IMG/VR virus record: IMGVR_UViG_3300047095_000752
Span: 62,001 to 126,000 of that record
Reading direction: 5' to 3' (one strand)
Length of the DNA: 64,000 bases
Shown here piece after piece: positions 15,830 to 61,578 of this stretch (its first letter is position 1; each line of letters starts with the position of its first letter). The notes below the pieces were generated by a model. The model saw only the letters and a program-made list of their open reading frames with translations. It was not told where the DNA came from and ran no database searches. The translations under genes were made by a program, and so were the position numbers.

Positions 15830-18313
15830 TTAACTCTTTAGTAGGATCGCTGACATGTACTGAGAAAATATTTCTTTCACGGGGTTTTGACGTGATACCT
15901 TAAAGGTTGCATCCCCCTTTTGAACGATCTCGGAAATCAATTCGTTTTTAACCCCGTGATCCGAACTCTGAGGTCCGAACAATTCATCGAGCAATACAGG
16001 TACATCCCAAGCAAGAAGCGAGTATAAGTCGCCTTCACCGATCTTCTGTCCGCCTCCTCGTTTAGCACCAGCCGTGGGAGCTAAAGTCCCAGTAGCATAG
16101 GAGCCGGTCGATCTCGCTGAAATCTTCTTATCCGACATATGCTCAAGTTTGTTTACATATAAATAACCAACCGAAATTGGATCTGTAATTTTATTATTAA
16201 ACGTAGGTAGCATTAATGGATATTTGGTTTTAAGTCCTAATACACGTAAAGCTTTTAATATATTATCTCTAGCTGGAGTTTTAAATGGAGGAAATACTAA
16301 AGGTACAAATCCGTTTTCTTTAATTTGATTGACCATATCCCTGTACATTGGATCGCTCATTGATTTAAGCTTAGTTATACTACTTTTACTGTAATGGAAT
16401 CCGTCTGTATTATCGAGAAGTGATAAAGCTGCAGCATATTTTGTGGTAAATTCTATTCTGGATTTTGTGGTTGCAATTATGGCTAACTCTTTGGCGATCA
16501 ACCCTGTGTGTAGCTCCATTAGCTGACCGGGGTTCATTCGATTAATTACAGATAGAGTTGAATATAACATTTCAATTTTACGACCATCTGGCATCCGAGG
16601 CATCTCATCATCGGGGACAATTGCCGCAACTACACCTTTATTGAACGCTCTATTATTAAGTTTATCCCCCTTGATCATTTGAAGCTCTTGTTGGATCGTG
16701 AATTTAATTAAGACCCCGATAAATGGCTTTCCACGTTCCTTAAATGACCCCAGAGGGTATCTACCATTGAGACGAGTGTAGCGCTCACGGAATGCTTCGA
16801 ACGCCGGTACAAGCAACTGAGGGATGTCCTCTTCGGGTATATTTGAATATACTTCGATATCTACAATCTTACCACCATCCGCTCTTAAGTGCTTCAAAGT
16901 TTGGGTATCGTAAAGGGTGGTAGAGTGTGTCATCAACACCGCCCCTTTATCTACATAATCCCCAATATTGGCTATAAATGAAAGATCGTCTTCTTCGGTT
17001 ATATACACACTTTGTTCTTCTTGGTGGAGAGATGTGAATCTTTTCGATGCACTTTCGCTCACAACCATGCCATCCTCGAAGTTATACCCATACCAAGGCA
17101 TAAACGCGCAAAGCATGTTGATCCCAGTGCTGATTATCCCATCCTTTACACCGGATCCTTCGGCTAAGATCTCTCCAGTTTTTACTTTTTGTCCGATCTT
17201 GACTAAAGTTTGAAATACTCCAAGTCCATTTTTGCCCTGCCCAGATTTTAACAACACAGGTTTAATATCTACAGCATGGATCTTATTTTTATCATCTCTT
17301 ATAATAATTTCAAGTGTAGTTATATCCGTAATGACACCATCAATGGGGGCTTTTTTAATAAACGAATCTGATAATAGACCCGATAATACACTTTCAAATC
17401 CAGTTTGGATCGCTGGAAATTCTTTATACTTAAGTGGGATCGCTTGTTTAGCCTGACCTGACGCCATGCAAACGCGAGCACCTTCATTTGATTCAACGAA
17501 TGGGATCATTGCCGGTCCGACAGAAAGGATCTCGTGCGGCATGACCTTTGATCGATCTCGTTCGGCAAATAATCCACGGGTGTTTGTTAGTGCAGATCCA
17601 ATCGTTAAATGTTGTAGGATCCCCATTTTATCCGATGCAGGTGTATCCAACGGATCGATGTTACCAAAATAGCTTGGGTGAATATTCATTGCTGCTGCGG
17701 GCCACGCTGCCGCTTTTGGGATCCCGCCGATCCCAATCGGCGTGATCCGCGTCAGCATGCTCAATTCCTCAAGTGGATTTATATTTTCAGCCGTAGTAAA
17801 GTTCTGACTTGTTACGATCAGACTCATAACGGTAGTGGGATTTATGAATAAACGGGCATCCTTATCACCTGAAAGGCGCTTTGACATATATTCGGTATAA
17901 GCCGCATTCAACTGCTTTTGGAGCAGAGATACGAATACTTCGGATGATCGAACGCGCAAGTTATGGGTGTCATTCCAATCGTCAATACGACCTTTTACTA
18001 CCTCCTCAACCATGTTTTGGATTATATATCTTAACTCGGTTGGGTGATTGCGGCTGGCCAAGATGTTCTTCTCAATAGCAGTCACGATATTATCGAGAAT
18101 GTTATTGAGGATATAGGTACAGTTTCTATTACCTATAGACTTTTCAAGAACACTCTGCCAGAACAATGGAGTTTCCATCGCATCTATATTTTTTGGGAAA
18201 AACGGAACAGATTTATTGAAGCATTCAATTTGTTGCTTCCCTGCCTCATTATTGTCCGCGCACTCGAATGTTGCAATTTGCCCATTAGGTAATTTTATAG
18301 ATCTATTGTACAT
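15830..18313 (-). CDS. rpoB: DNA-directed RNA polymerase beta subunit, C-terminal fragment
   Basis: NPLEELSMLTR, YNFEDG, GDKLNNRAFNKGVV, RMNPGQ, KLEHMSDKKISARSTG, GGQKIGE. Confidence 0.95.
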   Translation of the reverse strand: MYNRSIKLPNGQIATFECADNNEAGKQQIECFNKSVPFFPKNIDAMETPLFWQSVLEKSIGNRNCTYILNNILDNIVTAIEKNILASRNHPTELRYIIQNMVEEVVKGRIDDWNDTHNLRVRSSEVFVSLLQKQLNAAYTEYMSKRLSGDKDARLFINPTTVMSLIVTSQNFTTAENINPLEELSMLTRITPIGIGGIPKAAAWPAAAMNIHPSYFGNIDPLDTPASDKMGILQHLTIGSALTNTRGLFAERDRSKVMPHEILSVGPAMIPFVESNEGARVCMASGQAKQAIPLKYKEFPAIQTGFESVLSGLLSDSFIKKAPIDGVITDITTLEIIIRDDKNKIHAVDIKPVLLKSGQGKNGLGVFQTLVKIGQKVKTGEILAEGSGVKDGIISTGINMLCAFMPWYGYNFEDGMVVSESASKRFTSLHQEEQSVYITEEDDLSFIANIGDYVDKGAVLMTHSTTLYDTQTLKHLRADGGKIVDIEVYSNIPEEDIPQLLVPAFEAFRERYTRLNGRYPLGSFKERGKPFIGVLIKFTIQQELQMIKGDKLNNRAFNKGVVAAIVPDDEMPRMPDGRKIEMLYSTLSVINRMNPGQLMELHTGLIAKELAIIATTKSRIEFTTKYAAALSLLDNTDGFHYSKSSITKLKSMSDPMYRDMVNQIKENGFVPLVFPPFKTPARDNILKALRVLGLKTKYPLMLPTFNNKITDPISVGYLYVNKLEHMSDKKISARSTGSYATGTLAPTAGAKRGGGQKIGEGDLYSLLAWDVPVLLDELFGPQSSDHGVKNELISEIVQKGDATFKVSRQNPVKEIFSQYMSAILLKS

Positions 18314-18353
18314 AAATTTTCCTCTAAACCGAATAAAATGTTGGGGTTATATA

Positions 18354-18366
18354 TAGAAATTTGTCC
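18354..18366 (-). promoter_or_regulatory. Putative phage late promoter RACA-N6-TA
   Basis: GGACAAATTTCTA upstream of beta-C; 4 copies in the window. Confidence 0.55.
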
Positions 18367-18426
18367 TACGATATGATATCATATGTATATGTAGTATGTA
18401 AAAAGTTTAAATAAAAGGATTTAAAT

Positions 18427-19191
18427 ATGCCTGTAAAATTGAAATATGATTTTGTTTACAATTTCTTTAAAGAAAAAGGTTGTGAATTATTAGAAACGGA
18501 ATATGTCGGTACACACACTAAAATGAGATATATATGTGAATGTGGTGATGAAAGTGTAATCTCATATAATAAGTTCCAACGAGGTAACAGATGCGCAAAA
18601 TGTGCCGGTAATGAAAAACATACATATGAAGAAGTATATAAGGCATTTGCCTCTAAAGGCTATGAGTTGTTAGAAACTGAATATGTTAATATAGGTACCA
18701 AAATGAGATATAAATGTGAATGTGGTAATGTAAGTGAAATAAGATTTTACGCTTTCAAAAGGGGAAGTGGATGTAAAAAATGTCAAATCGAAAATAATTC
18801 CGGAGAAAATCACTACAGATTTAAAAAAGATCGTTCCCGATTATGCCGAACTACTTATTTATCGTTTGATCTTAAAAAACTCCACATCTTAAAAGACGAT
18901 CCAAATTATGATAACCACCTTCAATCCAAACATAAAGCTCAATTAAATCCTTCCCGTTGGGCTAAATCCGAGTACGCTGTAGATCATATATTCCCTCGCG
19001 TAGCTTTCATAGATAACAATTTAGATAATATTCACGGGGGAGTATTAATCAAAGAAATCTGCAATCTCAGAGAAAACTTAAGAATAATAAATAGAAAAGA
19101 TAACCAAACAAAAGCCGGAAAATACTCCCAAGAAGACTTCCTCCAATGGTTTAACAATAACCTAAATAAAAAAATAAAAGCCAGTGTATAA
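18427..19191 (+). CDS. HNH-family putative homing endonuclease with zinc-ribbon repeats
   Basis: Repeats ELLETEYV..KMRYxCECG..F.RG..CxKC; VDHIFP...NLR...N..K; AAGGA RBS; the only convincing plus-strand gene. Confidence 0.85.
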   Translation: MPVKLKYDFVYNFFKEKGCELLETEYVGTHTKMRYICECGDESVISYNKFQRGNRCAKCAGNEKHTYEEVYKAFASKGYELLETEYVNIGTKMRYKCECGNVSEIRFYAFKRGSGCKKCQIENNSGENHYRFKKDRSRLCRTTYLSFDLKKLHILKDDPNYDNHLQSKHKAQLNPSRWAKSEYAVDHIFPRVAFIDNNLDNIHGGVLIKEICNLRENLRIINRKDNQTKAGKYSQEDFLQWFNNNLNKKIKASV

Positions 19192-19215
19192 ACTGACTTT
19201 AAATATTATAATATA

Positions 19216-21349
19216 TTATTTCATTTTTAGAAAATAAGGATTTTTTAAATTTGTGGAATAACGCTTAATGTTTGGTGTGTACATATACAGTTGGATGTTA
19301 ACATGAGACCCATCTCTCGGATATAACGCAAGAGCCACATTAAATGAACTTACATAGAAATTAATGTTACACATCCCATATTGGGCGATACTATTTATCA
19401 ATTGTGTTATCCTATGTCCGATTTTAGCATATCCTTTGAACATATCATACATCGAAGTTCACCATCGGTTTGTCATCCTTATAGGTCTTTTATAATATGC
19501 CGGTCCTATCGACTTGATCATTGGAGTATATACATAGAGATGCCAATGTATTAGCTTCCGACCATCCAGTCGGGGTGAGTGTAATATATCAACGCCTACA
19601 CTTGTCAGTGTATAAAAGTGAACACGTAATAACTCAAATCCAAGTATACTATCTATAAACATTTTTAATTTTTCTGTCACGGTTTGAATATTTTTATAGG
19701 TCATAACCCCATAGTCCCTAATAACATCGGTCGTTTATATGTATCGCCGGACATCCTATTACTGGCGGCATAAGCATAAATGTGAAATTTATAGCTATAT
19801 CCATTCGTTACCGAGAAAAAACCAATCCCAACATTACCGGTCGCACCATAAAAATTTATAGACCATATCTCGTGTCCTGTTATTTTTTCCATGAATTTAC
19901 TTAACATATGCGCGACTCTTCTAATAACATTAATGGGCATATTTAATCATCCTTATCATTTCTTTATTGGATTTTTTTGGTAAAGTTCCATGATTACTTA
20001 TGTACTTGTATATATTTAAATGTATTTGATCTGATGTTACATAAGCGCCGTGTTTAAAAATACGAACCCCTACATTTTTAGTTATAGGAAAGTAAATGAT
20101 GTCATAAAATCCAATTCCAAGAATCTTATTTATAAAGCGGATGAGCCGCCTCGCTATTTTTATAGTGAAACTACTCATGAATAGGCACCTTTCCATTGAA
20201 TGCATACGTCAGTACCCATGCCGCGTCGGATTATTTCGCATTTGTTCTTTATAAGACATCCCAAACGTATGAGCTTCAAGATGGAGCCAGCACGAAAACA
20301 TTCCTATATGTTCGTACATTATTATCCTTGACGTTGTATTATTTAGTACTATATAGTTTTTATTGTTAGGTTGTTCAAAGGATTTTATATGGGTTCTGAT
20401 GTCATATATAAGGGCGCTTGATACCGATTTATTTATTGCGTTTAAAAATTTTTCAATCCAATATGATGAATCGTAGATCCATTCGTCCATTTGTGTTTTA
20501 TGTGAAAGCATACTAATCTTTTTTTATTAATTTTTTTGATATTAAAATATACTTGGTTGATAGCGGTCGGACGCTATTATGACGAGATCGCATTTGTTCT
20601 CCTACGCTTACTTTACCATTCCTCATGTAAACTCCTTTTAAAGTTAATAAATAATATGGTGCATACAACAGAATATATGTAAGCTTTTTGAATTTCTTTT
20701 GGATAAATAAATTACATAGTGTGATTCTGTATATCTTAAAAAGTGATTTGTTAAGGTGGTGTGTATATAAAAATCTAAATTAAAATTACTAACTACGTGA
20801 AATACCTTATTTATAAACTTTGCGATAATATATAGGGTGTGCCCAGTATACTCTTCAAAATAAGGTGCTATATTTATCATTTGTAATAGCTTATTTTATG
20901 ATGTAAAAATGAAATGCATAAAAATCCGTATCTATTATTATTCATTATTTTAAAGTTAGATTGGTGCAGAGCTATATTATTTGTTGGTATTCCAACGTGG
21001 ACCATATATCTTATAAGTGATGTGTGTTGAGCCGTGATAGTATTTACAAAGAGTCGCAGTATATTTGATAAATTACCTACAATTGTCACATATGCTTTTC
21101 GCATTTGATTGAAATTCATTATATTGTATACCTTATTTTAAACACAGTAAAGTAAACTTGTAATAGATGATGAGTTCTTAAATTTAATACTGAGAGTACA
21201 GATGGGATGGAGTAGTTCTCAATTGCTAAAACAACTATGTGATGAATATCGGGGCGTGATATATTTAATGCATTTATAAGCAATCTAATAGTGGAGCCTA
21301 CATTAAGACATGTCAGTTTAATGCAAGTATTATAGTGGTTACTAATCAT
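19216..21349 (-). CDS. Tandem array of 8 short paralogous hypothetical ORFs (76-100 aa)
   Basis: ORFs at 19216, 19459, 19701, 19930, 20209, 20644, 20877, 21119; overlapping stop/start codons; shared helix (L/I)xxFI(N/D)xI. Confidence 0.6.
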
Positions 21350-21515
21350 TTCTGTATACTTTATAAAAATCTATGATTACATCCAATGCTAAGCTAGCAA
21401 TTATACCTACTATTGCAGATTCTATAAAATTCATATTCCATATTTGATCTGTTACAATTATACATGTGAGGACGAATAAAAAATACGATACAGTACGTAA
21501 CCAAGGTCGATTCAT
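21342..21515 (-). CDS. Small membrane protein (57 aa, not in ORF track)
   Basis: MNRPWLRTVSYFLFVLTCIIV...AIVGIIASLALDVII; ATGA overlap and GGAGG RBS. Confidence 0.6.
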   Translation of the reverse strand: MNRPWLRTVSYFLFVLTCIIVTDQIWNMNFIESAIVGIIASLALDVIIDFYKVYRND

Positions 21516-21919
21516 TTACCCTCCAGTTCTTCTTTAAGTTTATTGAATAGTTTTTGTTTTTCAGTTTTTGTTAAATTTAATGCATCTATTTTATTTTGTC
21601 TTCTAGTTCTTTCTATAGCTCTTTTATATTCTTTTTCCTTTTTAATTCGTTCGTTAAATTCATTTTCTGTTTCATATCTATACAATACAAATTTTTCATC
21701 AAAACTGTCATAATAAGATTCCGATCTTTCAAGTTGCATTGAATAGTAGTCTCTATACTCAGGGTCGATAAGGTCTTCGAATTTCTTTTCGGCTTCGTCT
21801 AGACTTTTACGTATCTCTTCAAATGTCACATCGTAAAATCCACTATCTAAATTTATCGAATGAACTTTTTTATACTTTCTACTTATATTGTATTGAGTGT
21901 ATGTATCTTGCTTTGGCAT
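21512..21919 (-). CDS. Hypothetical protein, YRYETxxE family
   Basis: FVLYRYETENEFNER shared with 21879-22292 and 50239-50691. Confidence 0.7.
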   Translation of the reverse strand: MPKQDTYTQYNISRKYKKVHSINLDSGFYDVTFEEIRKSLDEAEKKFEDLIDPEYRDYYSMQLERSESYYDSFDEKFVLYRYETENEFNERIKKEKEYKRAIERTRRQNKIDALNLTKTEKQKLFNKLKEELEGK

Positions 21920-22292
21920 TGTATTTAATCCTCCTTCGTTGTCTTTTTACTCTTTTATTATAACAATTAAACATTCTGTGAATAAATTCTCCACGAGTCT
22001 CGTATCTATAAAGGACGACCATAAATGTCGACCCATGGGATGCGTTGATAAAATAATTCGAGTACTCATATTTATGTGGTGCCAACCTTGATAATAAACG
22101 ATTAAGTATATTTCCAATAAACATAGGTATTTCATTTGTGGAGACCATCCAAATATCAGCTACACCAATAAACTCAGATGTATGATATTTATCTCGTCTA
22201 TTTGAATTATAAAACGCTTCAATGTTATCTATATTATTTTCGTCTATTTTTGTATATTGATTCTCATCATCTATGCTTTTTAAATACATCAT
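21879..22292 (-). CDS. Hypothetical protein, YRYETxxE family
   Basis: VVLYRYETRGEFIHR. Confidence 0.65.
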   Translation of the reverse strand: MMYLKSIDDENQYTKIDENNIDNIEAFYNSNRRDKYHTSEFIGVADIWMVSTNEIPMFIGNILNRLLSRLAPHKYEYSNYFINASHGSTFMVVLYRYETRGEFIHRMFNCYNKRVKRQRRRIKYNAKARYIHSIQYK

Positions 22293-22311
22293 TTCACGAA
22301 AAAATCTCCAT

Positions 22312-22337
22312 AAAAAATGGGAGTGGTACTACCTCCC
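22312..22337 (-). terminator. Rho-independent terminator
   Basis: GGGAG/CTCCC stem plus T-run. Confidence 0.55.
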
Positions 22338-22353
22338 AAAAAGTACTAGACGG

Positions 22354-22446
22354 TTAGATCGCACGGAAGACGAAATCGTCATCCATTAGGAGTTGCCACG
22401 CGGGGATTGCAGGATGAACTTCAATCAACTTCGGTACCACGTTCAT
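22354..22446 (-). CDS. 30-aa peptide
   Basis: MNVVPKLIEVHPAIPAWQLLMDDDFVFRAI, AAGGA RBS, followed by a terminator. Confidence 0.5.
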   Translation of the reverse strand: MNVVPKLIEVHPAIPAWQLLMDDDFVFRAI

Positions 22447-22568
22447 GTTCCGTTCCTTTGGTTGGGTGGGAGATAAGCATGAGACTTGATTGTGGGGATA
22501 GGATGAAATTGTATTGATGTTTGTCAGAATCTATGTCGCATATAAATACAGATTTTGTATCTCCGAGT

Positions 22569-22790
22569 TTAGATTGCGACTGTATCATTGCGGGACATTT
22601 CTTGTAACTGCTTGTAGAACAGGTATGCAGATGTGTGCCTGTTATCAGGAACATTTTTGGATTTGATCAGTCTCTGTCCGTGGAGGCTATATTCAAAATC
22701 TCCATCAGGTTTCTTTTCGACTGATATAATGACTCCGTATTTAACTAAGGCGCTCTCCATCTCCTCAGTTGTAAGTTCTTCCGTGCACAT
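22569..22790 (-). CDS. Hypothetical protein
   Basis: GGAGG RBS, first gene after an AT-rich motif. Confidence 0.65.
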   Translation of the reverse strand: MCTEELTTEEMESALVKYGVIISVEKKPDGDFEYSLHGQRLIKSKNVPDNRHTSAYLFYKQLQEMSRNDTVAI

Positions 22791-22822
22791 TTTGACCTCC
22801 GTTTTTGGTTAAAGGATATATA

Positions 22823-22879
22823 CAATAATAAATATATATAATAAAAAAATAACCCCGCAGCCTGTAGTGGCAGCGGGGT
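22823..22879 (-). promoter_or_regulatory. Terminator hairpin fused to AT-rich promoter-like motif
   Basis: CCCCGC stem (22843-22879) abutting CAATAATAAATATATATAAT (22823-22842). Confidence 0.6.
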
Positions 22880-23003
22880 AAAGAGGTATCAGTCCCCGTC
22901 GAGGTTCCGCCCCCTCACCACCGAGGGATTGATGTTATGGAACCTCTCAGCGAAGGCGAACCCAGCAAGGATGGAGATATCCCTTCCGTTAGATTGGTGT
23001 CGG

Positions 23004-23396
23004 TTACATCGCTTCAATCGCGTTGACCGGGTTCAGTTCGGCACGAGATACACGGCGCGCTTCCAACAAGTCATTGCGAAGGGCTTCCGAAATGACCGAG
23101 GATCCAGCCATTCGAATTTGGAGTACACGGGCGCATTCGTGAACCTTTTTGGTATCGCGTCCCTTGAGAGCTTGTACTGTCTCCAAAAGTTCAGGAGCCA
23201 GCCGGAAGGCGATGAAGCCCTTGTCGTCGGTCGGGGCGACCGGGTTCTTCTGGATGTACTTCTGCAATGACACGATGATATTATCCATCACCTTGTCGTT
23301 GTCAACGGTGATGGGCGGTGCTCCTTTACATCCGCCGTCCGCCACCCCGTTGAAAATTCCGATGAGGATGTTCACAATTTTAATCTGGTTTGTCAT
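23004..23396 (-). CDS. Hypothetical protein (GC-rich codons; start MTNQIK)
   Basis: AAAGGA RBS before ATG at 23396; AT-rich motif at 23472-23491. Confidence 0.7.
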   Translation of the reverse strand: MTNQIKIVNILIGIFNGVADGGCKGAPPITVDNDKVMDNIIVSLQKYIQKNPVAPTDDKGFIAFRLAPELLETVQALKGRDTKKVHECARVLQIRMAGSSVISEALRNDLLEARRVSRAELNPVNAIEAM

Positions 23397-23506
23397 GGCG
23401 AGATTCCTTTTTGCCCGGTGGGCGTTATAACCTAACAACTTAACTCCCATAAGTTAGCGTCAGATTATTTACACTTCTTAATATATATAGTGAAAACTCA
23501 CTGAAA

Positions 23507-24664
23507 TTAATCAGTGAGTTTGCCTTTAAACCATTCCATGAACTCTTCTTGGTCGTATTTACCGGACTTCTGTCCATTCTCTTCTCTTGGTATTATTCTC
23601 AAGTTTTCTCTTAAATTGCAAATATTTTTTACTATTAGAGGACCATGAATATTATCTAGATCATTATCTATAAAAGCTTTACGGGGGAATATGTGATCTA
23701 CCGTGTAATCAGATCTATCCCATATATTACTTGATGCCTTGGCGACTTTTTGGGATTGGATGTGATTATTGTAGTTTGGATCGTCTTTTAATATATGTAG
23801 TTTACCATAATCAAACCCAAGATATGTCATTCTTAGAATACGGGTTCGATCTGGGTTAAATCTTGGATTGTTCTCACCTCTAACTTTATCATCTAAATAA
23901 CATTCCCGACACCGTTGTCCTATATTTTTAAAGTTATTAAATTTCATTTTAAATGTATGATTTCGGTCACATTTCATTATAAGGTATTTATGAGCATTTA
24001 TATATGTTTTACTTAATAAACTATAACCAAAACTTTCTATATGACTTTTAACGACTTCGTATTCGGGTCGAAATTTACCAAAACATTCTGGACATCGGTG
24101 ACCCACGTGAACAAACCCGACAAAACTCATTTCAAATATGTGATTATCCGGGCACTTGATTTTCATGTTTGTTTTATTGTTGATGTATTCTGTATCTAAC
24201 AGTAAATATCCTTCAACATTTATTTTAGACTTTACATAATTAAAATCATTTTTACGTTCCTGTGCAAATCGTATTGAGACGCACTTATTACATCGATTAT
24301 CCTGACTATAAAAACTGCTAAACCGTACCTTATATGTGTGGTCTGCGGGACATTTTATTGTTATTTTTGAGTTTACACCCTTATAATTTCCTATATCAAT
24401 TAATGTGTAACCATAGTCATTTAGTATTTTAGATATTTCATCAGATCCATGCTTGACCTCTTTCTTAATACATTTCTTACAACTAGTAGTCCGTCTAAAA
24501 TTATTATATGGTATCTCCGATATATTACCGCATGAGCATTTATATTTCATTTTGGTTTGTGTATTAATATATTCTTCTTTACTGACTAATAATACACAGT
24601 TTCGATCTAAATATGTTTGTAATACTTGTTCGTAGGGTACGGGTTTAGACATATGAATTTTCAT
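23507..24664 (-). CDS. HNH-family putative homing endonuclease with 4 zinc-ribbon repeats
   Basis: Repeats LLxxxYIN...KCxxxH.F...RCxxC; VDHIFP...NLRENLRII; likely start ATG 24664 (ORF track starts at 24778). Confidence 0.85.
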   Translation of the reverse strand: MKIHMSKPVPYEQVLQTYLDRNCVLLVSKEEYINTQTKMKYKCSCGNISEIPYNNFRRTTSCKKCIKKEVKHGSDEISKILNDYGYTLIDIGNYKGVNSKITIKCPADHTYKVRFSSFYSQDNRCNKCVSIRFAQERKNDFNYVKSKINVEGYLLLDTEYINNKTNMKIKCPDNHIFEMSFVGFVHVGHRCPECFGKFRPEYEVVKSHIESFGYSLLSKTYINAHKYLIMKCDRNHTFKMKFNNFKNIGQRCRECYLDDKVRGENNPRFNPDRTRILRMTYLGFDYGKLHILKDDPNYNNHIQSQKVAKASSNIWDRSDYTVDHIFPRKAFIDNDLDNIHGPLIVKNICNLRENLRIIPREENGQKSGKYDQEEFMEWFKGKLTD

Positions 24665-24723
24665 TCTAAAAATACCTACATGAACTTGTCGTGTAGGTAG
24701 TATATTTAATTTATTTATTTGAA

Positions 24724-26364
24724 CTAAGCTATGGTATAAGTGACACCATAATCTTTTAAACTTTCTTTTAATCCCCATTTATAAGCTAACACCATCAATA
24801 GGGGAAATTTGTAGGATCCCATGTACCCTATGAGGTATGCGCCGTTTTGGAGGAACTTACTGTGGATCTTCATGATCGAATACGATGATTCGAAGCGCCC
24901 TACGTTAATTGTGGGATAGAATATCGGATAACGTACGATCTGGTTGACTAGTATTTTCTGTTGTCCATTTATCACGAACGTTCCATTCGCAGTAAGATAC
25001 GGTAGGTCCACATGCACTTCGTGTATGTTACCCTCCGGATCTTTAAGTTGGATCTGGTAGCGCTCCTTGATCGATTGATATATCTCCGATGCTCCTGTAT
25101 GCACTTGTTTTACTTCCATACTCTTCAATTTCAGCGGAACATCTTTATCTTCGAGGAGTTTGAAGGCATCTGAGATATCATCTTTTAAATTAACTCTAAA
25201 ATCAGTCATACGTTTATTTAAAATATGTGCAGGGCTTTGATAATCTAAAAGCTTGGGTACATCGGCGGACTTAATGATCATATTCGTTGAAAAGTTTTTG
25301 GCAGGATCTCTTTTTAATAATTGAGTTACAAGTTTATTTATAATCTCAGCTTGCTTCTCAGGACTCTTCCGATCAATCTTCTTTGAAATTTCTTTAGCCT
25401 TCTCAAGATCACCCATAACGCTATAAACAACAGATCTTGTGATTAATTTATTATGATTTTCAAAATCTTTTTCGCGATCAATTGTAGAGTCAGCTTTTGT
25501 ATAGTTCTTAATAGCGTCCTGTACGATTTGTTCGTGCTGCTTACTTACGAGAGGAGATTCCTTAGTGGCTATTTGAGCTACTTCTTCAGCGTGATTTGAT
25601 TCCCCTGTGACTCCATCTGTATTTTGTTGTAGTCTTAATAGTATATTTTTAACTCGGACTAAACTATTATTTTTAGCTAAGACATCATACAGCTTTACGA
25701 AGCGCCCACCATCTTTATTATAAACGAACATTATAATTTTTTCGAATGGTATTGATTCTCTTTTACCAGCTTCTAACATTAATAACATATTAAAAAAGAT
25801 ATAACACTTCTTGTAGAATAGTTTATCGGATAAAGGCTTATCGACGTTCACGGCATATAACAAGATTGTTTCAAATTTATCTTTATCGATCTCACTAGCA
25901 GTTTCTAAATATTGATTATATAATTTAGATCCCTGACCTGTATCAAATCTTTTTGTACGATACATTAAGTCTACGGCGTTTAAATACCGTGTGGCATCGT
26001 AAAAGAAGTTGTATCCATTTACTTTAGTGTACTCACCGGGTCTACCTTTAATTGGTAGGAGGTCTCGATCTTTAATTAATTTTGTATATTCTGGGGTGAG
26101 ATATGATTGTGGTCTTGTTATGGTAGGTACAAAAACATATCGAGCATATTGCTTTTTGAAATTTAAAAAGTTATAGGTCTCTAATAAATTTACATTTTCA
26201 CCATAGAAATAAAAACATAAGTTCTTTTTACTATTTGGATCTTTTATTGGTATGACTAATTCATCATACGGTATAAAAAGCTTTTGGTTTAATAAATTCA
26301 TGTTGAGTACCTTATGTTCTTTAAATCCGGTATTGAAAATAATTGGGTTATTACGTAAACCCAA
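24724..26364 (-). CDS. rpoB: DNA-directed RNA polymerase beta subunit, N-terminal fragment with large N-terminal extension
   Basis: LPYLTANGTFVINGQQKILVNQIVRYP matches beta region IPLMTxxGTFxINGxERVxVSQLxRSP; likely start ATG 26301. Confidence 0.85.
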   Translation of the reverse strand: MGLRNNPIIFNTGFKEHKVLNMNLLNQKLFIPYDELVIPIKDPNSKKNLCFYFYGENVNLLETYNFLNFKKQYARYVFVPTITRPQSYLTPEYTKLIKDRDLLPIKGRPGEYTKVNGYNFFYDATRYLNAVDLMYRTKRFDTGQGSKLYNQYLETASEIDKDKFETILLYAVNVDKPLSDKLFYKKCYIFFNMLLMLEAGKRESIPFEKIIMFVYNKDGGRFVKLYDVLAKNNSLVRVKNILLRLQQNTDGVTGESNHAEEVAQIATKESPLVSKQHEQIVQDAIKNYTKADSTIDREKDFENHNKLITRSVVYSVMGDLEKAKEISKKIDRKSPEKQAEIINKLVTQLLKRDPAKNFSTNMIIKSADVPKLLDYQSPAHILNKRMTDFRVNLKDDISDAFKLLEDKDVPLKLKSMEVKQVHTGASEIYQSIKERYQIQLKDPEGNIHEVHVDLPYLTANGTFVINGQQKILVNQIVRYPIFYPTINVGRFESSYSIMKIHSKFLQNGAYLIGYMGSYKFPLLMVLAYKWGLKESLKDYGVTYTIA

Positions 26365-26399: not shown

Positions 26400-27827
26400 T
26401 TAAAATAGAATACCCTTTTGCATAGCATCCATAACCTGTGCCCGTTCGGACTGTAGTGAGCTTACACACTGGGGATCGCCTTGGCATTGTTGGAGTAGAC
26501 CATCTATATTGCTTAATTTCAGTTTATTCATATAATTGATACAAGCTTGTTGTTTACCGCCAGTTAAATTTGCACAACCTTGTTCAGTATACTTTTCCTG
26601 TTTACGAGCTTGATGTCTTTTCCATAGTATTGAAGCTGCAGTACCGGCGGCGGCGAGACCACCGGCAACAGCAGTCGCCGTTTGTGCTGTTGGGGACATT
26701 TGTTTATATCCATTTATAACGGCATTAGCACCATTTTTAGCCCGTTGCATTATACTTGGACCCTTGGGTTCTTCCGGTGTACCCCTAACCATATTAGCCA
26801 GATCATAATATGTATATCCGGCTACACCCATACCTGCAGTCGCTCTAAGTGGTTTACGCATTAAATTACGGCCAGCTCCAGTCAATGAGTTACCGACCCA
26901 TTTTGGGGCGACTCCAGATTTAGCAACGGCGGCTCCACCTTTTCTAAGCCCTAATCCAGCCATTTTAGGTAGGAATCTGGCAGCCGCACCAATAGCAGCC
27001 CCAATTTCATTAAATGTATATACGCCATCAACCCAAGGTGAATAATAAGATTCTTCAAAGTTCATAGCCTCAGACATCTCATCTTCATCAAACTCATTGG
27101 CTACAAAATTAACAGGGGTATCGACTGTAGCCTTGTCTAAAATAGATGGTTTAGAACTTGTTATAATACTTCTAATCTTATTAATATTAGTATTTACACC
27201 TTTTTGATATAATAGCTTGTATTCTTTAGTTCCATTCTTAGGTGAATACTCACAATATATAATCTTATCGAATGGGACTTCGGAGTCAATGTTCTTAATA
27301 TTTTTAATCATAGCTAAATATAATGGTAGAATCTTTTTAGTTAATAACTTTTCGGAAAATTCCAAATCTGTATTTAATGTATATAATAATACTTTTTCGG
27401 AGTTACTCGGTGAATTATTACATAATAATTTAAAATATGAACTCATCAATTCTCTAAACTTCTGATGATTGAATACAGTGATATTGTACCTGTCAATGAT
27501 AGCATCAAAATATCGATTAGCGTCTATATAGGTGTGAAATTTATCGAAGTCTTTTAGCTCGTTCAAGTTAGCTTTAATAGGTACAAAACCAGCATCTTTT
27601 ATACCGACCTTGTAATCTGAATTCATATAGGTTCGGAACGGGGCTGGAGATGTGGGTACAACATACTTACGTATACCGTTACCTGTAAATTTAGACCCTT
27701 TTATTGCAGAAAGAGTATCTTCGTTTTCACTTAACACCATTATTGACAGTAGCTTACCACCAACTGGGGATGTGGTTACACTTATGTCATTATATGAAAT
27801 GTAGGGTTTAATTGATGAATATATCAT
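26400..27827 (-). CDS. Putative internal virion protein (N-domain shared with RNAP beta-N; Ala/Gly-rich, Cys-rich C-terminus)
   Basis: Manual alignment to both neighbours; function inferred. Confidence 0.55.
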   Translation of the reverse strand: MIYSSIKPYISYNDISVTTSPVGGKLLSIMVLSENEDTLSAIKGSKFTGNGIRKYVVPTSPAPFRTYMNSDYKVGIKDAGFVPIKANLNELKDFDKFHTYIDANRYFDAIIDRYNITVFNHQKFRELMSSYFKLLCNNSPSNSEKVLLYTLNTDLEFSEKLLTKKILPLYLAMIKNIKNIDSEVPFDKIIYCEYSPKNGTKEYKLLYQKGVNTNINKIRSIITSSKPSILDKATVDTPVNFVANEFDEDEMSEAMNFEESYYSPWVDGVYTFNEIGAAIGAAARFLPKMAGLGLRKGGAAVAKSGVAPKWVGNSLTGAGRNLMRKPLRATAGMGVAGYTYYDLANMVRGTPEEPKGPSIMQRAKNGANAVINGYKQMSPTAQTATAVAGGLAAAGTAASILWKRHQARKQEKYTEQGCANLTGGKQQACINYMNKLKLSNIDGLLQQCQGDPQCVSSLQSERAQVMDAMQKGILF

Positions 27828-28796: not shown

Positions 28797-28813
28797 AAAA
28801 TATAGATTTACTA

Positions 28814-28826
28814 TATAAATTTGTCC
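28814..28826 (-). promoter_or_regulatory. Putative late promoter RACA-N6-TA
   Basis: GGACAAATTTATA, just downstream of a terminator at 28845-28874. Confidence 0.55.
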
Positions 28827-28894
28827 TAAAAATAAAAAGTCTACAAAAAAACACGGTAGTTATAATACCGTGTTAATCATTATTTTTTATTATA

Positions 28895-31512: not shown

Positions 31513-32337
31513 TTATTTCAATAATTTAATTTCATCTATAATTTTACTTTTAAACCATTTTAAAAATTTCTCTTTGTTGTACTTATCAAATTTCTTCATA
31601 TTTTCCGAATGTAGAAGTAATTGTAGATTGTCTCGTGTATTAGCTATTTTTCGAACTATTTGTTCCGTATGAATTTTTTCCGATAAAATTTTAGAAAATG
31701 CGCAAATCGGAAAAATATGATCTACATTATAATCTCCGGGATTTATTAAAAAATTGTTATAATTCGGATCATCTTTCATATTTTTAATAATCCATCGTAT
31801 TTTCTTTTTTCGTCTTAATTTGGAGTTTGATGTAACTTCGTCTCGAATTGGATTAAAATTATAATGATTTGTACCCGATCTATTTTTTGACATTCTTTCT
31901 TTAAAACATTCTATACAAATTTTATAACGATCCAATCGATTGGAATATGGGTGTCCTTTTTGACACACGAAATCTAATTTTTGCCGGTATCCCTCATATA
32001 TTTCTGATGTGCAAATTATGTTATCTTTTTTACACATCTCTTTAATTTGATTTAATTTTTTGACTTTAAGTATCACTTTATTACTTTTTATTTTTTCTAA
32101 CGTTTTAGATTTTATTATACTTTTATTTTCTAGTTTAATTTCTTTATTACAAACTTTACAACAATTTCTTTTTCTTTTTATAAGATCTTTATACGTTTTT
32201 TGCTGTAAATGCCCATCGGGACACAAACAATCCATATGGTGGGTGGTTCCATTATAGTGTTGATCTAATAAAACCCACCCCAAATCAAAAAATGCTTTAT
32301 CTACAATTGATATATCTATCTTAGATTTATTTTTCAT
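31513..32337 (-). CDS. HNH-family putative homing endonuclease
   Basis: CPDGH...CKVC, GTNHYNFNP, KDDPNYNN, VDHIFP, NLQLL...NMKK; third paralog of 18427 and 23507. Confidence 0.8.
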   Translation of the reverse strand: MKNKSKIDISIVDKAFFDLGWVLLDQHYNGTTHHMDCLCPDGHLQQKTYKDLIKRKRNCCKVCNKEIKLENKSIIKSKTLEKIKSNKVILKVKKLNQIKEMCKKDNIICTSEIYEGYRQKLDFVCQKGHPYSNRLDRYKICIECFKERMSKNRSGTNHYNFNPIRDEVTSNSKLRRKKKIRWIIKNMKDDPNYNNFLINPGDYNVDHIFPICAFSKILSEKIHTEQIVRKIANTRDNLQLLLHSENMKKFDKYNKEKFLKWFKSKIIDEIKLLK

Positions 32338-55766: not shown

Positions 55767-57323
55767 TTATTTCTTCTTTTCTTTTAATTTTTCTATACTC
55801 AACTCACTGAGGGGTTCGCCGAATAATACTTTTTCGATCTGTGAATATTTCTTCGAGTCTTTTGAGATCAACCCAAATGTTAAACTTTTACCAAGGTTCT
55901 CATAGGCGACCCCCAGAGACCACGATATAATCGAAGGAAGAGATTTAATGCTATGTAATTCCGGATCGTATGGATCCTTCAATCTGGCTGCAATCATCGG
56001 ATCTTTCTTATTTCTTAAAATCGTTGCGAGGATGACCTCAAGGTGGCAACTATCCCAAGGTCCAAAAGTACTTAGAGCTTCGTAAAACTTCTTGTATAGG
56101 TTCTCTGGGGTCTCCCATGGACCCTTGCCCGCAACCAATGAGTCTAGGCTCTGGGCGATCTTTTCAGGAGCGATCTTAAAGAATTTAATTGTAAATAATT
56201 TAACATCTTTACCATACATTAAAGTGATACTATCAGCAGTTTCATTATAATCATCGTGGATATTAATTTCAACAGGCATTTCAATAGTAGCATTAACTTC
56301 AATATTACCAATATACATTCTAAAATAGCCTAAAGGTAACTTATAAGTATTTCCTACTTTTTCAATTGCATACTCGTCCTTGAAGATACTTTTATTGATC
56401 TTAATCGTTGTTACTTCAGCGCTGGAGTATAGATCGTTATCTTTTTGATATACCATACCTGATAAATATTTTTCTTCGTCATCTGTAATAGAGTCCGCAA
56501 GTTCTTTTAAGATATCCACCTTCTTGAAGACTACGGCCCCGCCTGTGTGAAATGAATTGTGTGTCTGAACATTATTATTCAAAAATTCTTCGGAGTCAGT
56601 TTTAAGATCATATACATATCCACAATATCCCTCTATACCGGGAACTACCTGCTCAATATCAATGTAATCATTAATATCCTGTATAAGCTTATCTGAAGGC
56701 ACAGCATTCTTTAAAGTCCAATATACAAGTCCGTCTTCAGTATTAATATCAAAGTTACAAGTATGACTTAAATGATCTGCTACAAGCTTCAACTGTGATA
56801 CAAAGTTAAAACTAAAAATCTTAGACTTGGTGTTGACTTTATCGTCGGACTTAATATTATCAAATAAGAAATGATATAAAAGGTATGTTAAGTTACTAGT
56901 ACTTATTTTAGATAAATAATCAGGATTAATACAAAAATTATATATCGAATCGCCATTAAAATATTCGGAATGATTTGCAATTATATGTAAATTAGGATCT
57001 TCAAATATATTCAACAAAATGTCAAATAGTATATCTACATCAGGCGGCTCTACCCCGTAAACAAATTCTAATTTACGTTCGGTGTTATCAACCCAAATTC
57101 TATCATGGAACATTACTATATCTTTAGCTTCAACCACCGTAGGTTGCCCGTCAAGCGACTGAATCCATACAGGGTGGTCTTCTTGGCAAAACAGCATATG
57201 TCCAGTCACAGTGCGAATAAAGCACATTGGTGCCGTTGGTGTATGCCTTTGGATCTTATATGCTCGGGTTAAACCGTCTTTACCCACGACATTGAGATCT
57301 AACTCTTTAGTTTCTAAATTCAT
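55767..57323 (-). CDS. rpoC: Split-intein C-part (256 aa) fused to RNA polymerase beta' C-terminal fragment
   Basis: CQEDHPVW (block B), VYDL (block F), QTHN|SFHTGG (block G + trigger loop), HLEVILATI, AYEN. Confidence 0.9.
   Translation of the reverse strand: MNLETKELDLNVVGKDGLTRAYKIQRHTPTAPMCFIRTVTGHMLFCQEDHPVWIQSLDGQPTVVEAKDIVMFHDRIWVDNTERKLEFVYGVEPPDVDILFDILLNIFEDPNLHIIANHSEYFNGDSIYNFCINPDYLSKISTSNLTYLLYHFLFDNIKSDDKVNTKSKIFSFNFVSQLKLVADHLSHTCNFDINTEDGLVYWTLKNAVPSDKLIQDINDYIDIEQVVPGIEGYCGYVYDLKTDSEEFLNNNVQTHNSFHTGGAVVFKKVDILKELADSITDDEEKYLSGMVYQKDNDLYSSAEVTTIKINKSIFKDEYAIEKVGNTYKLPLGYFRMYIGNIEVNATIEMPVEINIHDDYNETADSITLMYGKDVKLFTIKFFKIAPEKIAQSLDSLVAGKGPWETPENLYKKFYEALSTFGPWDSCHLEVILATILRNKKDPMIAARLKDPYDPELHSIKSLPSIISWSLGVAYENLGKSLTFGLISKDSKKYSQIEKVLFGEPLSELSIEKLKEKKK
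56556..57323 (-). mobile_element. IntC half of atypically split intein with degenerate endonuclease-like insert
   Basis: Residues 1-256; ends His-Asn followed by Ser+1. Confidence 0.88.
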
Positions 57324-57333
57324 TTACAGTTCC

Positions 57334-57603
57334 TTAAATAATAGGTGAAGATGCTAATTGCCAATATACGGGCGCGTAATATTCTTCCGGGACATGTGAT
57401 TTTTTGTAGTTCTTTTCGCCTTCCCAGCAACCCATATGTTTATATTGACTAAACTTTTTATTATATCTTAATAAACATATCTTAAATTCACGAGGTTCTT
57501 CGGAATAATATAATGCACGTGTTAAACAGTCGTTGTCAGGGAGTTTATCAACGGTTTTAATCCAGTTGCTTAAATTAATTTCGTCTTTACTTATTTTGTG
57601 CAT
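57334..57603 (-). CDS. DUF551-like small protein
   Basis: WIKTVDKLPD...PVYWQL. Confidence 0.65.
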   Translation of the reverse strand: MHKISKDEINLSNWIKTVDKLPDNDCLTRALYYSEEPREFKICLLRYNKKFSQYKHMGCWEGEKNYKKSHVPEEYYAPVYWQLASSPII

Positions 57604-57605
57604 TG

Positions 57606-59324: not shown

Positions 59325-59343
59325 TTAATATTTTCTTTCGTAA

Positions 59344-60834: not shown

Positions 60835-60855
60835 TCAGGATTCCTTTAATACGTA

Positions 60856-61218
60856 TTAATCCAATTGCTTATATCGTTTATCTAATTCGTTAATTAAAGC
60901 GTGGATACTATCGTCCATTTTATATTTATTTGCTGTCGCCCAAGATCCAGCATAAGCATTATCATCTTCTTTTATTTCCGGTGTTATTTCAAGAACGGAT
61001 ACGAGAGCCTCATACAGTTTGTGTGTATCTATTGATTTGTATGTACTGTCTCTATCTCTTGATTTATCAAGTTCACTTCTTAATTGTAGTAATTCTTGTA
61101 TATACTCAGCATTCTGTTTTTTTAATGTACTGATAATGGATATTGAATCTATATTTGATCCTTCATACTTATCCATATCGTTTATATTGAGACCAAAAGA
61201 TCCATTTTCAGATTCCAT
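60856..61218 (-). CDS. Hypothetical protein
   Basis: 120 aa, between beta' fragments. Confidence 0.65.
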   Translation of the reverse strand: MESENGSFGLNINDMDKYEGSNIDSISIISTLKKQNAEYIQELLQLRSELDKSRDRDSTYKSIDTHKLYEALVSVLEITPEIKEDDNAYAGSWATANKYKMDDSIHALINELDKRYKQLD

Positions 61219-61233
61219 TTAAATACCCTTTTG

Positions 61234-61560
61234 TTAAATGCCTCTGCTGTACTCTTCTTGTGCATCTGCTAAGACAGGTACAACATACCGAGTATAACCT
61301 CTTCGTCCATCACTTACAAATTTTGGGGCAGCGATAAAGTGGGCGGCTTGCTTATCATTCTTCATCTTAAATGGAAATTTACCATCCCATCCTTCGACTT
61401 TGTCTAAGTTCGTCTCGCCAACTTCAACTTTAGTACCATCTGATAATTTAATATCATTCGGGATACCATTACCTTCAAAATCATCATTAGCCTTATACTT
61501 GAGGATTTCTTTCTTGGTCATACTATCAATTTGTTCGAATATAATCTTTTTCAATACCAT
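61234..61560 (-). CDS. Hypothetical protein (possible head protein)
   Basis: 108 aa, AAGGA RBS, N-terminal IIFEQ. Confidence 0.65.
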   Translation of the reverse strand: MVLKKIIFEQIDSMTKKEILKYKANDDFEGNGIPNDIKLSDGTKVEVGETNLDKVEGWDGKFPFKMKNDKQAAHFIAAPKFVSDGRRGYTRYVVPVLADAQEEYSRGI

Positions 61561-61578
61561 TGTTATTTCCTTTGTGGG

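What the first reader, a model, noticed from the sequence alone, without database searches (positions are those of the whole stretch)
18314..24723. RNAP beta gene split by a 6.4-kb island bounded by two convergent, closely related HNH genes
Seen: beta-N ends ...DYGVTYTIA-stop and beta-C starts MYNRSIKLPNG with its own RBS and late-type motif; neither end has an intein motif. The intervening DNA begins and ends with HNH genes in inverted, inward-facing orientation. Their C-terminal domains are highly similar (KLHILKDDPNY, VDHIFPRxAFIDNxLDNIHG, ICNLRENLRII). They enclose ~14 small accessory ORFs, and 18427-19191 is the only plus-strand gene in the window. Inference: an endonuclease-driven gene fission, with a composite-transposon-like cargo island or an inversion substrate; the two beta pieces would assemble non-covalently.
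Basis: partly seen in the sequence, partly recalled or inferred. Interest (0 to 1): 0.72.

Follow-up and report, generated by a model that had tools for sequence, protein, structure and literature searches.

The report
Split phage RNAP gene, variable gap
A giant lake-water phage encodes the beta subunit of one of its own RNA polymerases as two genes, but the break is old and shared by relatives that lack the two flanking nuclease genes, so the DNA between the halves is a fast-changing slot for small accessory genes that two selfish nuclease genes entered later.

Summary
Window 15830-18313 (-) is the C-terminal 827 aa and 24724-26301 (-) the N-terminal 525 aa of one RNA polymerase beta subunit. 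They are separated by 6.4 kb that starts and ends with convergent HNH-type nuclease genes and holds about 14 small ORFs.

This is a true gene fission. Contiguous ~1370-aa homologues exist, and the break maps to a short variable linker. The halves are predicted to bind (ipSAE 0.78, controls 0.00).

These HNH genes did not cause the fission:
- Split-type sequences form one clade nested among contiguous forms.
- Five relatives with identical protein ends have no HNH gene in the gap.
- The gaps measure 0.5, 3.2, 3.8 and 6.4 kb, with almost no shared content.
- The two HNH genes are two of at least 14 paralogues in this 245-kb genome, placed beside core genes, and are not each other's closest relatives.
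- Their DNA is 70-75% identical, with a longest exact run of 17 nt.
- Six assemblies show one orientation.

The gap fits a hyperplastic accessory-gene region bounded by conserved terminator and promoter-like motifs.

Side finding: the beta' gene of the same enzyme is a fractured gene with an atypically split intein.

The parts
24724..26301 (-). beta-N: the N-terminal piece of the RNA polymerase beta subunit (525 aa from Met22; the ORF is open to 26364). Residues 1 to about 380 are a lineage-specific extension. Residues about 410-525 correspond to bacterial beta residues about 100-220.
   Evidence: relatives are 524-525 aa. (profile match to RpoB chains). (equals residues 14-539 of the contiguous 1369-aa P0016).
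15830..18313 (-). beta-C: the C-terminal piece of the same beta subunit (827 aa), carrying the fork and catalytic-site domains.
   Evidence: Rpb2_6 E 6e-39, Rpb2_3. (RpoB chains, E 7e-63). (equals P0016 547-1368, 55.5% identity). (predicted to bind beta-N 330-525: ipSAE 0.78 against 0.00 for the controls).
24673..24699 (-). Hairpin followed by a T run directly after the beta-N stop codon (terminator-like). The likely ribosome-binding site and start of HNH-B sit in and just after its 3' arm.
   Evidence: Every relative has an analogous hairpin plus T run after beta-N.
23507..24664 (-). HNH-B: a free-standing nuclease gene with four CapR/treble-clef zinc-ribbon repeats and a C-terminal His-Me (HNH-like) domain. 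It sits between the beta-N terminator and the first class-1 motif of the gap.
   Evidence: CapR E 1e-14. (PHROG 'endonuclease/HNH endonuclease')..
23466..23496 (-). Class-1 promoter-like motif (variant form) in front of the 148-aa ORF.
   Evidence: (D4). The genome holds 35 matches to this motif.
23004..23450 (-). 148-aa ORF with no family match. It lies in a stretch with higher G+C (about 40%).
   Evidence: Called as a gene in independent assemblies.
22817..22847 (-). Class-1 promoter-like motif (consensus form), followed by a GGAGG ribosome-binding site and the 73-aa ORF.
   Evidence: (D4). The same motif follows the beta-N terminator in relatives L004, L005/L007 and L011.
21342..22790 (-). 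Four small ORFs of 73, 137, 135 and 57 aa. The 137-aa and 135-aa products share a short motif. The 135-aa ORF is the only cargo gene with homologues in a relative's gap (L008). The 57-aa product looks like a membrane protein.
20209..21349 (-). Four to five small ORFs (76, 80, 78, 51 and 100 aa) with no family match.
19216..20205 (-). Tandem array of four diverged paralogous small ORFs (78, 81, 79 and 91 aa).
   Evidence: alignment. (leave-one-out HMMs recover each member at E 4e-7 to 3e-9 among 982 ORFs; the next best hit is above 0.05).
19177..19200 (.). Hairpin between the convergent ends of the cargo ORFs and HNH-A (terminator-like).
18427..19191 (+). HNH-A: a free-standing nuclease gene of the same family with two zinc-ribbon repeats, on the opposite strand. 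It sits between the cargo terminator and the beta-C promoter-like motif.
   Evidence: Its nearest paralogues are elsewhere in the genome.
18347..18367 (-). Class-2 promoter-like motif (AGGACAAATTT...) 35-55 nt upstream of the beta-C start codon. It is conserved upstream of beta-C in all relatives (30-60 nt from their start codons).
28807..28827 (-). Class-2 promoter-like motif in front of the 320-aa / 475-aa / beta-N gene string, so both beta halves carry the same motif class on separate units.

Best explanation

The fission:
- In one polymerase the beta gene underwent a single, old fission in a short, poorly conserved surface linker. By arithmetic on the alignments, this linker lies about where E. 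coli beta carries its lineage-specific lobe insertion.
- Since then the two halves have been separate transcription units. Beta-N ends an operon and is followed by a terminator hairpin. Beta-C has its own class-2 promoter-like motif and ribosome-binding site.
- The two polypeptides most likely assemble non-covalently into one beta fold (inferred).

The gap:
- The space between the halves behaves like a hyperplastic region. Small accessory genes, driven by a different AT-rich class-1 promoter-like motif, are gained, lost, duplicated and replaced there.
- This probably happens by recombination at the repeated terminator/promoter motifs (inferred, by analogy with T4-type PeSL cassettes).

The HNH genes:
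- In the lineage of this phage, two members of a 14-copy family of free-standing HNH-type homing endonuclease genes later settled at the two edges of the gap, next to the conserved beta pieces.
- Their paralogues sit in the same way next to the terminase, DNA polymerase and the other polymerase's genes.
- They probably spread by cutting endonuclease-free relatives near those conserved genes during co-infection (inferred).
- They did not create the split, and they do not make the island a transposon or an invertible segment.
For: Shown:
- Both pieces are beta.
- Contiguous homologues of about 1330-1400 aa carry the same N-terminal extension. P0016 covers beta-N up to residue 539 and beta-C from residue 547, and has Rpb2_3 and Rpb2_6. 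The junction in contiguous forms is a short variable linker.
- A contiguous paralogue in the same genome places the break at about its residues 155-175.
- Split-type sequences form one clade (SH-aLRT 100) nested in contiguous forms.
- Relatives at 54-63% (beta-N) and 69-75% (beta-C) identity have identical ends and order, with gaps of 0.5 kb (L005, L007), 3.2 kb (L004), 3.8 kb (L011) and 6.4 kb (L008). None has an HNH gene in the gap. Only one ORF family is shared between any two gaps.
- All relatives show the same layout: beta-N stop, hairpin with T run, cargo, class-2 motif, beta-C. In all but L008 the class-1 motif follows the hairpin. Both motifs recur genome-wide in front of genes.
- HNH paralogues lie beside the terminase, both split DNA polymerase pieces and the second polymerase's beta'/beta genes.
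- The complex model gives ipSAE 0.78 against a best control of 0.00. That mark was reached by 58 of 80 solved complexes and 2 of 110 mismatched pairs.
- The same arrangement is seen in six assemblies.
Against: - No transcript, protein or cleavage data exist. Promoter and terminator roles are inferred from conserved motifs only.
- The complex score may reflect the model's memory of contiguous beta structures.
- The tree is the quick version, because the careful search did not finish. One further split-length sequence (P0040) sits elsewhere, and one clade member (P0012) has an unrelated 152-aa tail.
- In the two more distant split-type relatives, the large genes downstream of beta-N are not beta-C. 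Adjacency of the halves is therefore not universal.
- No closely related genome pair was available to show recombination at the motifs.
Confidence: 0.75

Rival explanations
1. Hitch-hiking cargo island. The two inward-facing endonucleases cut endonuclease-free relatives in or near the conserved beta-N 3' end and beta-C 5' end. Double-strand-break repair then copies the whole 6.4-kb gap, so the HNH pair mobilises the cargo as one unit.
For: The nuclease genes sit at both edges, directly next to conserved genes. The family shows the genome-wide placement typical of free-standing homing endonucleases. The island is identical in six assemblies.
Against: The two genes are not sister copies. No relative carries this cargo or these HNH genes. 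Gaps of similar size and turnover exist without any HNH gene. No cleavage sites are known.
Confidence: 0.12
2. The original fission was made by a mobile element (an intein or intron with its endonuclease) that was later lost. This is the gene-breaking route proposed for fractured genes and for jumbo-phage polymerase genes. The present HNH genes are merely later visitors. This concerns the origin of the split and is compatible with the best explanation for the present state.
For: - The beta' gene of the same polymerase shows the intermediate state. A relative (L004) has an intein at the trigger loop. This phage has a split intein there, with a nuclease-like gene in between.
- The model is published (PMC2677866).
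- Intron mobility was proposed as a cause of split jumbo-phage polymerase genes (PMC7598289).
Against: None of 13 split-type cluster representatives keeps any intein-like residue at the beta junction. The break lies in a variable linker, whereas inteins and homing endonucleases usually sit in highly conserved motifs (for contrast). Inteins found in contiguous relatives sit elsewhere, in Rpb2_6.
Confidence: 0.2
3. Invertible or excisable segment. Recombination between the inverted HNH genes flips the island and changes the expression of beta-C or of the cargo.
For: Inverted arms of 114 and 197 nt exist.
Against: The arms are only 70-75% identical, with a longest exact run of 17 nt. No recombinase gene is in the island. 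One orientation is seen in six assemblies.
Confidence: 0.03
4. A pseudogene or an assembly artefact, that is, a broken beta gene.
For: None beyond the interruption itself.
Against: Both halves are conserved at 54-75% identity, with intact ends, in many genomes. The same structure appears in independent assemblies. Each half has its own expression signals.
Confidence: 0.01

Closest known systems
Split beta subunit genes of jumbo-phage multisubunit RNA polymerases (AR9 non-virion enzyme g105/g089; phiKZ-type virion and non-virion enzymes)
   Same: - The phage encodes two multisubunit polymerases, and beta is made as separate N and C polypeptides.
- In AR9 the two halves are also separated by many unrelated genes, about 8 kb and 15 genes.
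- Homing endonucleases and introns are common in these genes (PMC7598289).
   Different: - The break is at another position. The AR9 non-virion split maps to about residue 245 of this beta-C. The virion-type split maps to about residue 600.
- Here contiguous close homologues still exist, and the second polymerase has an unsplit 1012-aa beta.
- Identity to known jumbo-phage proteins is only 20-30%.
Hyperplastic regions and promoter/stem-loop (PeSL) cassettes of T4-type phages (PMC2839356, PMC4122927)
   Same: A block of small, fast-turning-over, mostly unknown genes lies between conserved core genes. It is bounded by a repeated composite of terminator hairpin and conserved promoter-like motif.
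   Different: The phage lineage and the motif sequences are unrelated. Recombination at the motifs is not shown here. The slot lies inside what was once a single gene.
Free-standing homing endonuclease genes of phages (T4 seg/mob type, 'intronless homing'; from general knowledge)
   Same: The nuclease genes are packed tightly between conserved essential genes. There are many diverged paralogues per genome, they are sporadically absent from relatives, and they have no intron or intein around them.
   Different: The domain make-up differs: tandem CapR/treble-clef zinc ribbons plus a GmrSD_C-like His-Me domain. No activity or target is known.
Fractured genes: split intein halves separated by a free-standing endonuclease gene (Dassa et al. 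2009, PMC2677866)
   Same: A conserved enzyme gene is broken in two, with nuclease genes between the halves, in an environmental phage.
   Different: For beta there is no intein at either end, so it is not a fractured gene in that sense. The beta' gene of the same polymerase does fit that pattern (see Noticed in passing).

Membership tests
RNA polymerase beta subunit (RpoB/Rpb2) | Catalytic-site and fork domains (Pfam Rpb2_6, Rpb2_3) | tested here: met
   Beta-C has Rpb2_6 at E 6e-39 and Rpb2_3 at E 7e-6. It matches RpoB chains at E 7e-63.
RNA polymerase beta subunit (RpoB/Rpb2) | Conserved N-terminal beta segment present in the upstream piece | tested here: met
   The beta-N profile, positions 420-475, matches RpoB residues about 105-170 at E 9e-6 to 1e-4. 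The match is weak. It is supported by contiguous homologues that cover both pieces.
RNA polymerase beta subunit (RpoB/Rpb2) | The two pieces form one subunit | tested here: inconclusive
   The prediction supports binding, with ipSAE 0.78 against controls at 0.00. There is no experimental evidence, and the score may come from the model's memory of solved beta structures.
phiKZ/AR9-type split beta | Split at the non-virion site (after the fork domain) or at the virion site | tested here: not met
   The AR9 g105/g089 junction maps to about residue 245 of this beta-C. Virion N-beta (phiR1-37 g099, phrog_3148) extends to about residue 600.
phiKZ/AR9-type split beta | Two sets of multisubunit polymerase genes in one phage genome | tested here: met
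Composite transposon | Two near-identical copies of one insertion sequence encoding a transposase at the ends | tested here: not met
   The flanking genes are nucleases of the His-Me type. They are 46% identical as proteins and 70-75% as DNA. Their closest paralogues are elsewhere, and they share no end sequences.
Invertible DNA segment | Inverted repeats able to recombine, a recombinase, and both orientations present in the population | tested here: not met
   The longest exact run is 17 nt. No recombinase family was hit. Six assemblies show one orientation. A read-level test failed.
Intein or split intein at the beta junction | Cys/Ser/Thr-initiated Hint block after the N piece, and an ...HN + Cys/Ser/Thr block before the C piece | tested here: not met
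   Beta-N ends ...YTIA and beta-C starts MYNRS. The same kind of ends appear in 13 split-type cluster representatives.
Group I or II intron | Match to intron covariance models between the exons | tested here: not met
   Rfam gave no match at gathering score in the window, and none at E up to 1 in 18000-25000.
Free-standing homing endonuclease (HNH/His-Me) | Conserved catalytic His-Me motif | tested here: met
   D186-H187, N213 and N226/K229 are invariant or nearly so in 14 paralogues. A GmrSD-type nuclease chain matches at E 0.013. HNH/GmrSD_C look-alikes were found. Pfam HNH models themselves do not hit.
Free-standing homing endonuclease (HNH/His-Me) | Intergenic position next to conserved genes, and sporadic presence among relatives | tested here: met
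Free-standing homing endonuclease (HNH/His-Me) | Cuts the endonuclease-free allele and is copied into it | not testable with these tools
   This needs enzyme assays and co-infection crosses.
Hyperplastic region with PeSL-like cassettes | Variable gene content between conserved core genes | tested here: met
   The gaps are 0.5, 3.2, 3.8 and 6.4 kb, with one shared ORF family.
Hyperplastic region with PeSL-like cassettes | Repeated terminator/promoter composites at module borders | tested here: met
Hyperplastic region with PeSL-like cassettes | Insertion/deletion endpoints at the motifs in closely related genomes | not tested
   No relative between 63% and 99% identity was found.

The most novel reading that the evidence does not exclude
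The island is a hitch-hiking cargo module. The two inward-facing endonucleases each cut endonuclease-free relatives in the conserved end of one beta half, and repair copies the entire gap. A once-single essential gene would then have become a landing pad through which accessory genes are driven across a phage population. Together with the fractured beta' gene next door, this polymerase would display several stages of mobile-element-driven gene breaking in one genome.
Probability: 0.12. Interest if true: 0.6.

Novelty: new variant of a known kind. Interest (0 to 1): 0.4.

Why it matters
How the polymerase genes of jumbo phages came to be in pieces is an open question (PMC7598289). In this family, contiguous and split beta genes both survive, so three things can be read from sequence:
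- The fission can be placed on a tree.
- The break maps to a few linker residues.
- The later history of the gap can be followed, with accessory-gene turnover first and endonuclease invasion later.

The case shows that flanking endonuclease genes are not evidence for the cause of a split. It also gives a third beta split site, useful for understanding which surface positions of the enzyme tolerate a break. The neighbouring beta' gene, with a conserved split intein in the trigger loop, offers a natural contrast between a covalently healed and a non-covalent split in one enzyme.

Tried and rejected
- Megablast of the region and tblastn of beta-N against the phage collection found nothing.
- Peptide-pattern scans of IMG/VR with single proteins found no relatives. 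Relatives came only from the protein searches.
- Rfam and tRNA scans of the window were empty.
Contig contexts were used instead.
- The AlphaFold model of beta-N alone was poor in the beta-like C-terminal part (pLDDT below 50). Its Foldseek matches had TM about 0.2 and were uninformative.
- A profile of the putative C-intein piece of beta' found no intein in PDB sequences, only chance SUMO hits. Motifs and Atlas look-alikes carried that point instead.
- The large genes downstream of beta-N in the distant relatives L030 and L031 turned out not to be beta-C.
- All cargo ORFs lack Pfam and PHROG matches.
- The four ORFs at 20209-21349 could not be shown to belong to the tandem family at 19216-20205.
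- The sigma-70 promoter scan did not exceed the shuffled expectation.

Full report
**What the window is.** The window is bases 62001-126000 of a 245,225-bp IMG/VR virus record from lake-water metagenomes. The genome has two sets of multisubunit RNA polymerase genes. Identity to known jumbo phages is only 20-30% at the protein level. Nearly all genes in the window are on the minus strand.

**Checking the observation.**
- ORF 15830-18313 (-) encodes 827 aa with Pfam Rpb2_6 (E 6e-39) and Rpb2_3. It matches bacterial RpoB chains at E 7e-63.
- ORF 24724-26364 (-) ends ...YTIA-stop. Relatives are 524-525 aa, so it probably starts at Met22.
- Pfam does not recognise the upstream piece. A profile of it and seven relatives matches the conserved N-terminal beta segment of RpoB chains, residues about 105-170 (E 9e-6 to 1e-4).
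- The two ORFs at the ends of the 6.4-kb interval are convergent and 46% identical (E 1e-70).
- Each has tandem CapR/treble-clef zinc ribbons. Each also has a C-terminal domain with invariant D-H, N and N/K positions. That domain resembles GmrSD_C/HNH nucleases.
- Between them lie 13-15 small ORFs without family matches.
- There is no intron and no intein motif at the beta ends.

**Is it one gene in two pieces?** Yes.
- A search of 1.84 billion representative proteins with the beta-N profile found 164 hits. Many are 1330-1400 aa long and match the whole profile at their N-terminus.
- P0016 (1369 aa) aligns with beta-N up to its residue 539 and with beta-C from its residue 547 (55.5% identity). 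It carries Rpb2_3 and Rpb2_6.
- In contiguous forms the junction is a short, variable, polar linker between two conserved segments. In this phage, the stop of beta-N and the Met of beta-C replace that linker.
- The contiguous 1012-aa beta of the second polymerase in the same genome places the break at about its residues 155-175.
- From the RpoB matches, the break falls at about E. coli beta residue 220 on one side and 340 on the other. As far as I recall, E. coli carries a lineage-specific lobe insertion there. This last point is from memory and was not tested.
- A complex model of beta-C 1-790 with beta-N 330-525 scored ipSAE 0.78 (three runs: 0.77-0.85) against 0.00 for all three controls. 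That mark was reached by 58 of 80 solved complexes and 2 of 110 mismatched pairs. This supports non-covalent assembly but does not prove it, and it may reflect memory of contiguous beta structures.

**When did it split, and did the HNH genes do it?**
- In a quick maximum-likelihood tree of 50 sequences, 12 of the 13 split-type sequences fall in one clade (SH-aLRT 100). That clade is nested among contiguous forms. It also holds P0012, whose beta-N region is followed by an unrelated 152-aa tail. The 13th split-type sequence (P0040) lies elsewhere on the tree.
- Within that clade, five relatives keep exactly the same protein ends and the order beta-N, gap, beta-C. They are 54-63% identical in beta-N and 69-75% in beta-C.
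- Their gaps are 0.5 kb with one 68-aa ORF (L005, L007), 3.2 kb (L004), 3.8 kb (L011) and 6.4 kb (L008). None contains an HNH gene.
- An all-against-all comparison of gap ORFs found only one shared family: the 135-aa ORF at 21512-21919 and two ORFs of L008.
- The HNH genes are two of at least 14 paralogues in the genome. HNH-A is closest (57-59%) to copies at other loci.
- They share no DNA end motifs and are packed tightly between their neighbours.
- This is the pattern of free-standing homing endonuclease genes.

**Anatomy of the gap.**
- In every relative, beta-N is followed by a hairpin with a T run. In L004, L005/L007 and L011 an AT-rich class-1 motif then follows directly.
- A class-2 motif (AGGACAAATTT...) lies 30-60 nt upstream of the beta-C start codon in all of them.
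- Both motifs recur across the genome in front of genes: 35 and 15 matches at two mismatches. The exact 10-mer of class 2 occurs 5 times against 0.8 expected.
- Class 2 also precedes the operon that ends in beta-N (28827) and the first beta' piece (62523).
- In this phage, HNH-B sits between the beta-N hairpin and the class-1 motifs at 23489 and 22840. HNH-A sits, inverted, between the cargo's hairpin (19177-19200) and the class-2 motif of beta-C.
- Both HNH genes therefore look like later insertions at the edges of a pre-existing cassette.
- Inside the gap, four ORFs at 19216-20205 are a tandem paralogous family (leave-one-out E 4e-7 to 3e-9).
- The layout resembles the hyperplastic regions and promoter/stem-loop cassettes of T4-type phages (PMC2839356, PMC4122927). 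Recombination at the motifs is inferred, not shown.

**Transposon or inversion?**
- The inverted arms are 114 and 197 nt at 70-75% identity, with a longest exact run of 17 nt.
- No recombinase or transposase family is present.
- Six independent assemblies show the same order and orientation.
- A read-level test could not be run.

**Comparison with known systems.**
- Split beta and beta' genes are a known hallmark of jumbo phages with their own polymerases. Intron mobility has been proposed as their cause (PMC7598289).
- In AR9 the two non-virion beta halves lie about 8 kb apart, with 15 genes between them.
- The break here is at a different place. AR9's junction maps to about residue 245 of this beta-C, and the virion-type junction to about residue 600.
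- This is therefore a new variant: a third split site, in a family where contiguous forms survive.

**Side finding.** The beta' gene of the same polymerase is in at least three pieces.
- Its middle piece (59344-60834) ends with about 23 residues that look like the start of an intein, right after ...EKIMK.
- Next comes a DUF7487 nuclease-like gene (57606-59324) and an 89-aa ORF.
- Then comes a 518-aa ORF (55767-57323). Its first ~256 residues look like the rest of an intein with a LAGLIDADG domain, ending ...THN, followed by SFHTGGAV.
- Contiguous relatives read ...EKIMK-SFHTGG at this point, which I take to be the trigger loop.
- At least 16 protein clusters share the short N-intein ending.
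- Relative L004 has a complete intein at the same site.
- This fits the 'fractured gene' arrangement (PMC2677866) with an atypically short N-intein.
- It contrasts with beta, where no intein trace remains.

**Verdict.** The split is real and the halves probably assemble. The HNH genes are late, unrelated invaders of an ordinary variable slot, not the cause of the split, and they do not form the ends of a transposon or an invertible element.

Noticed in passing
window 55767-60834 (-): The beta' gene of the same polymerase is a 'fractured' gene.
- The 496-aa piece (59344-60834) ends with a ~23-aa intein-like start, right after ...EKIMK.
- A 572-aa DUF7487 gene (57606-59324) and an 89-aa ORF follow.
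- The 518-aa ORF (55767-57323) begins with ~256 aa of intein plus a LAGLIDADG-like domain, ending ...THN|SFHTGGAV.
- Contiguous relatives read ...EKIMK|SFHTGG at this point.
- At least 16 protein clusters share the short N-intein.
- L004 has a full intein at this site.

   Followed up: yes
window 59344-62499 (-): The first beta' piece (306 aa, 61579-62499; Pfam Rpb1_2 positions 1-49) is separated from the next piece (Rpb1_2 positions 90-164) by two small ORFs (60856-61218 and 61234-61560). This is a split inside the catalytic double-psi barrel region, with no intein signs.
   Followed up: partly
G000:C1:50336-57993 (outside the window): The second polymerase set is arranged as beta' (902 aa), HNH, contiguous beta (1012 aa), HNH, all on the minus strand.
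   Followed up: partly
G000:C1:152623-159206 (outside the window): The family-B DNA polymerase is in two genes, with the C-terminal piece upstream of the N-terminal piece. Each piece is followed by an HNH paralogue.
   Followed up: no
whole genome G000; in the window also 31513-32337 (-): There are at least 14 paralogues of the zinc-ribbon plus His-Me nuclease family, with 2-4 zinc-ribbon repeats each. One overlaps the end of the large terminase gene.
   Followed up: partly
window 26400-27827 (-) and 24724-26301 (-): The N-terminal ~220 aa of the 475-aa ORF upstream of beta-N are paralogous to the lineage-specific N-terminal extension of beta-N (26% identity over 217 aa). The same pairing is seen in relatives. 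The fold of this domain was not identified.
   Followed up: partly
whole genome; window 22840, 23489, 15565, 18367, 28827, 62523: Two conserved promoter-like motif classes were found: an AT-rich ~20-nt class 1 (35 matches) and AGGACAAATTTATATA class 2 (15 matches). Class 2 precedes the pieces of this polymerase. Their timing and the polymerase that reads them are unknown.
   Followed up: partly
window 24664-24699 (-): The likely ribosome-binding site and start codon of HNH-B lie in and just after the 3' arm of the beta-N terminator hairpin. This could keep its translation low. This is inference only.
   Followed up: no
G000:C1:223982-228326 (outside the window): A volactin-like (actin-fold) gene (Pfam E 4e-52) and a GH9 cellulase-like gene flank another HNH paralogue.
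   Followed up: no
proteins P0021 and P0035 (contiguous beta relatives): Two longer contiguous beta homologues (1702 and 1742 aa) carry LAGLIDADG-type inserts inside Rpb2_6, a site different from the split site. P0012 has beta-N fused to an unrelated 152-aa tail.
   Followed up: no
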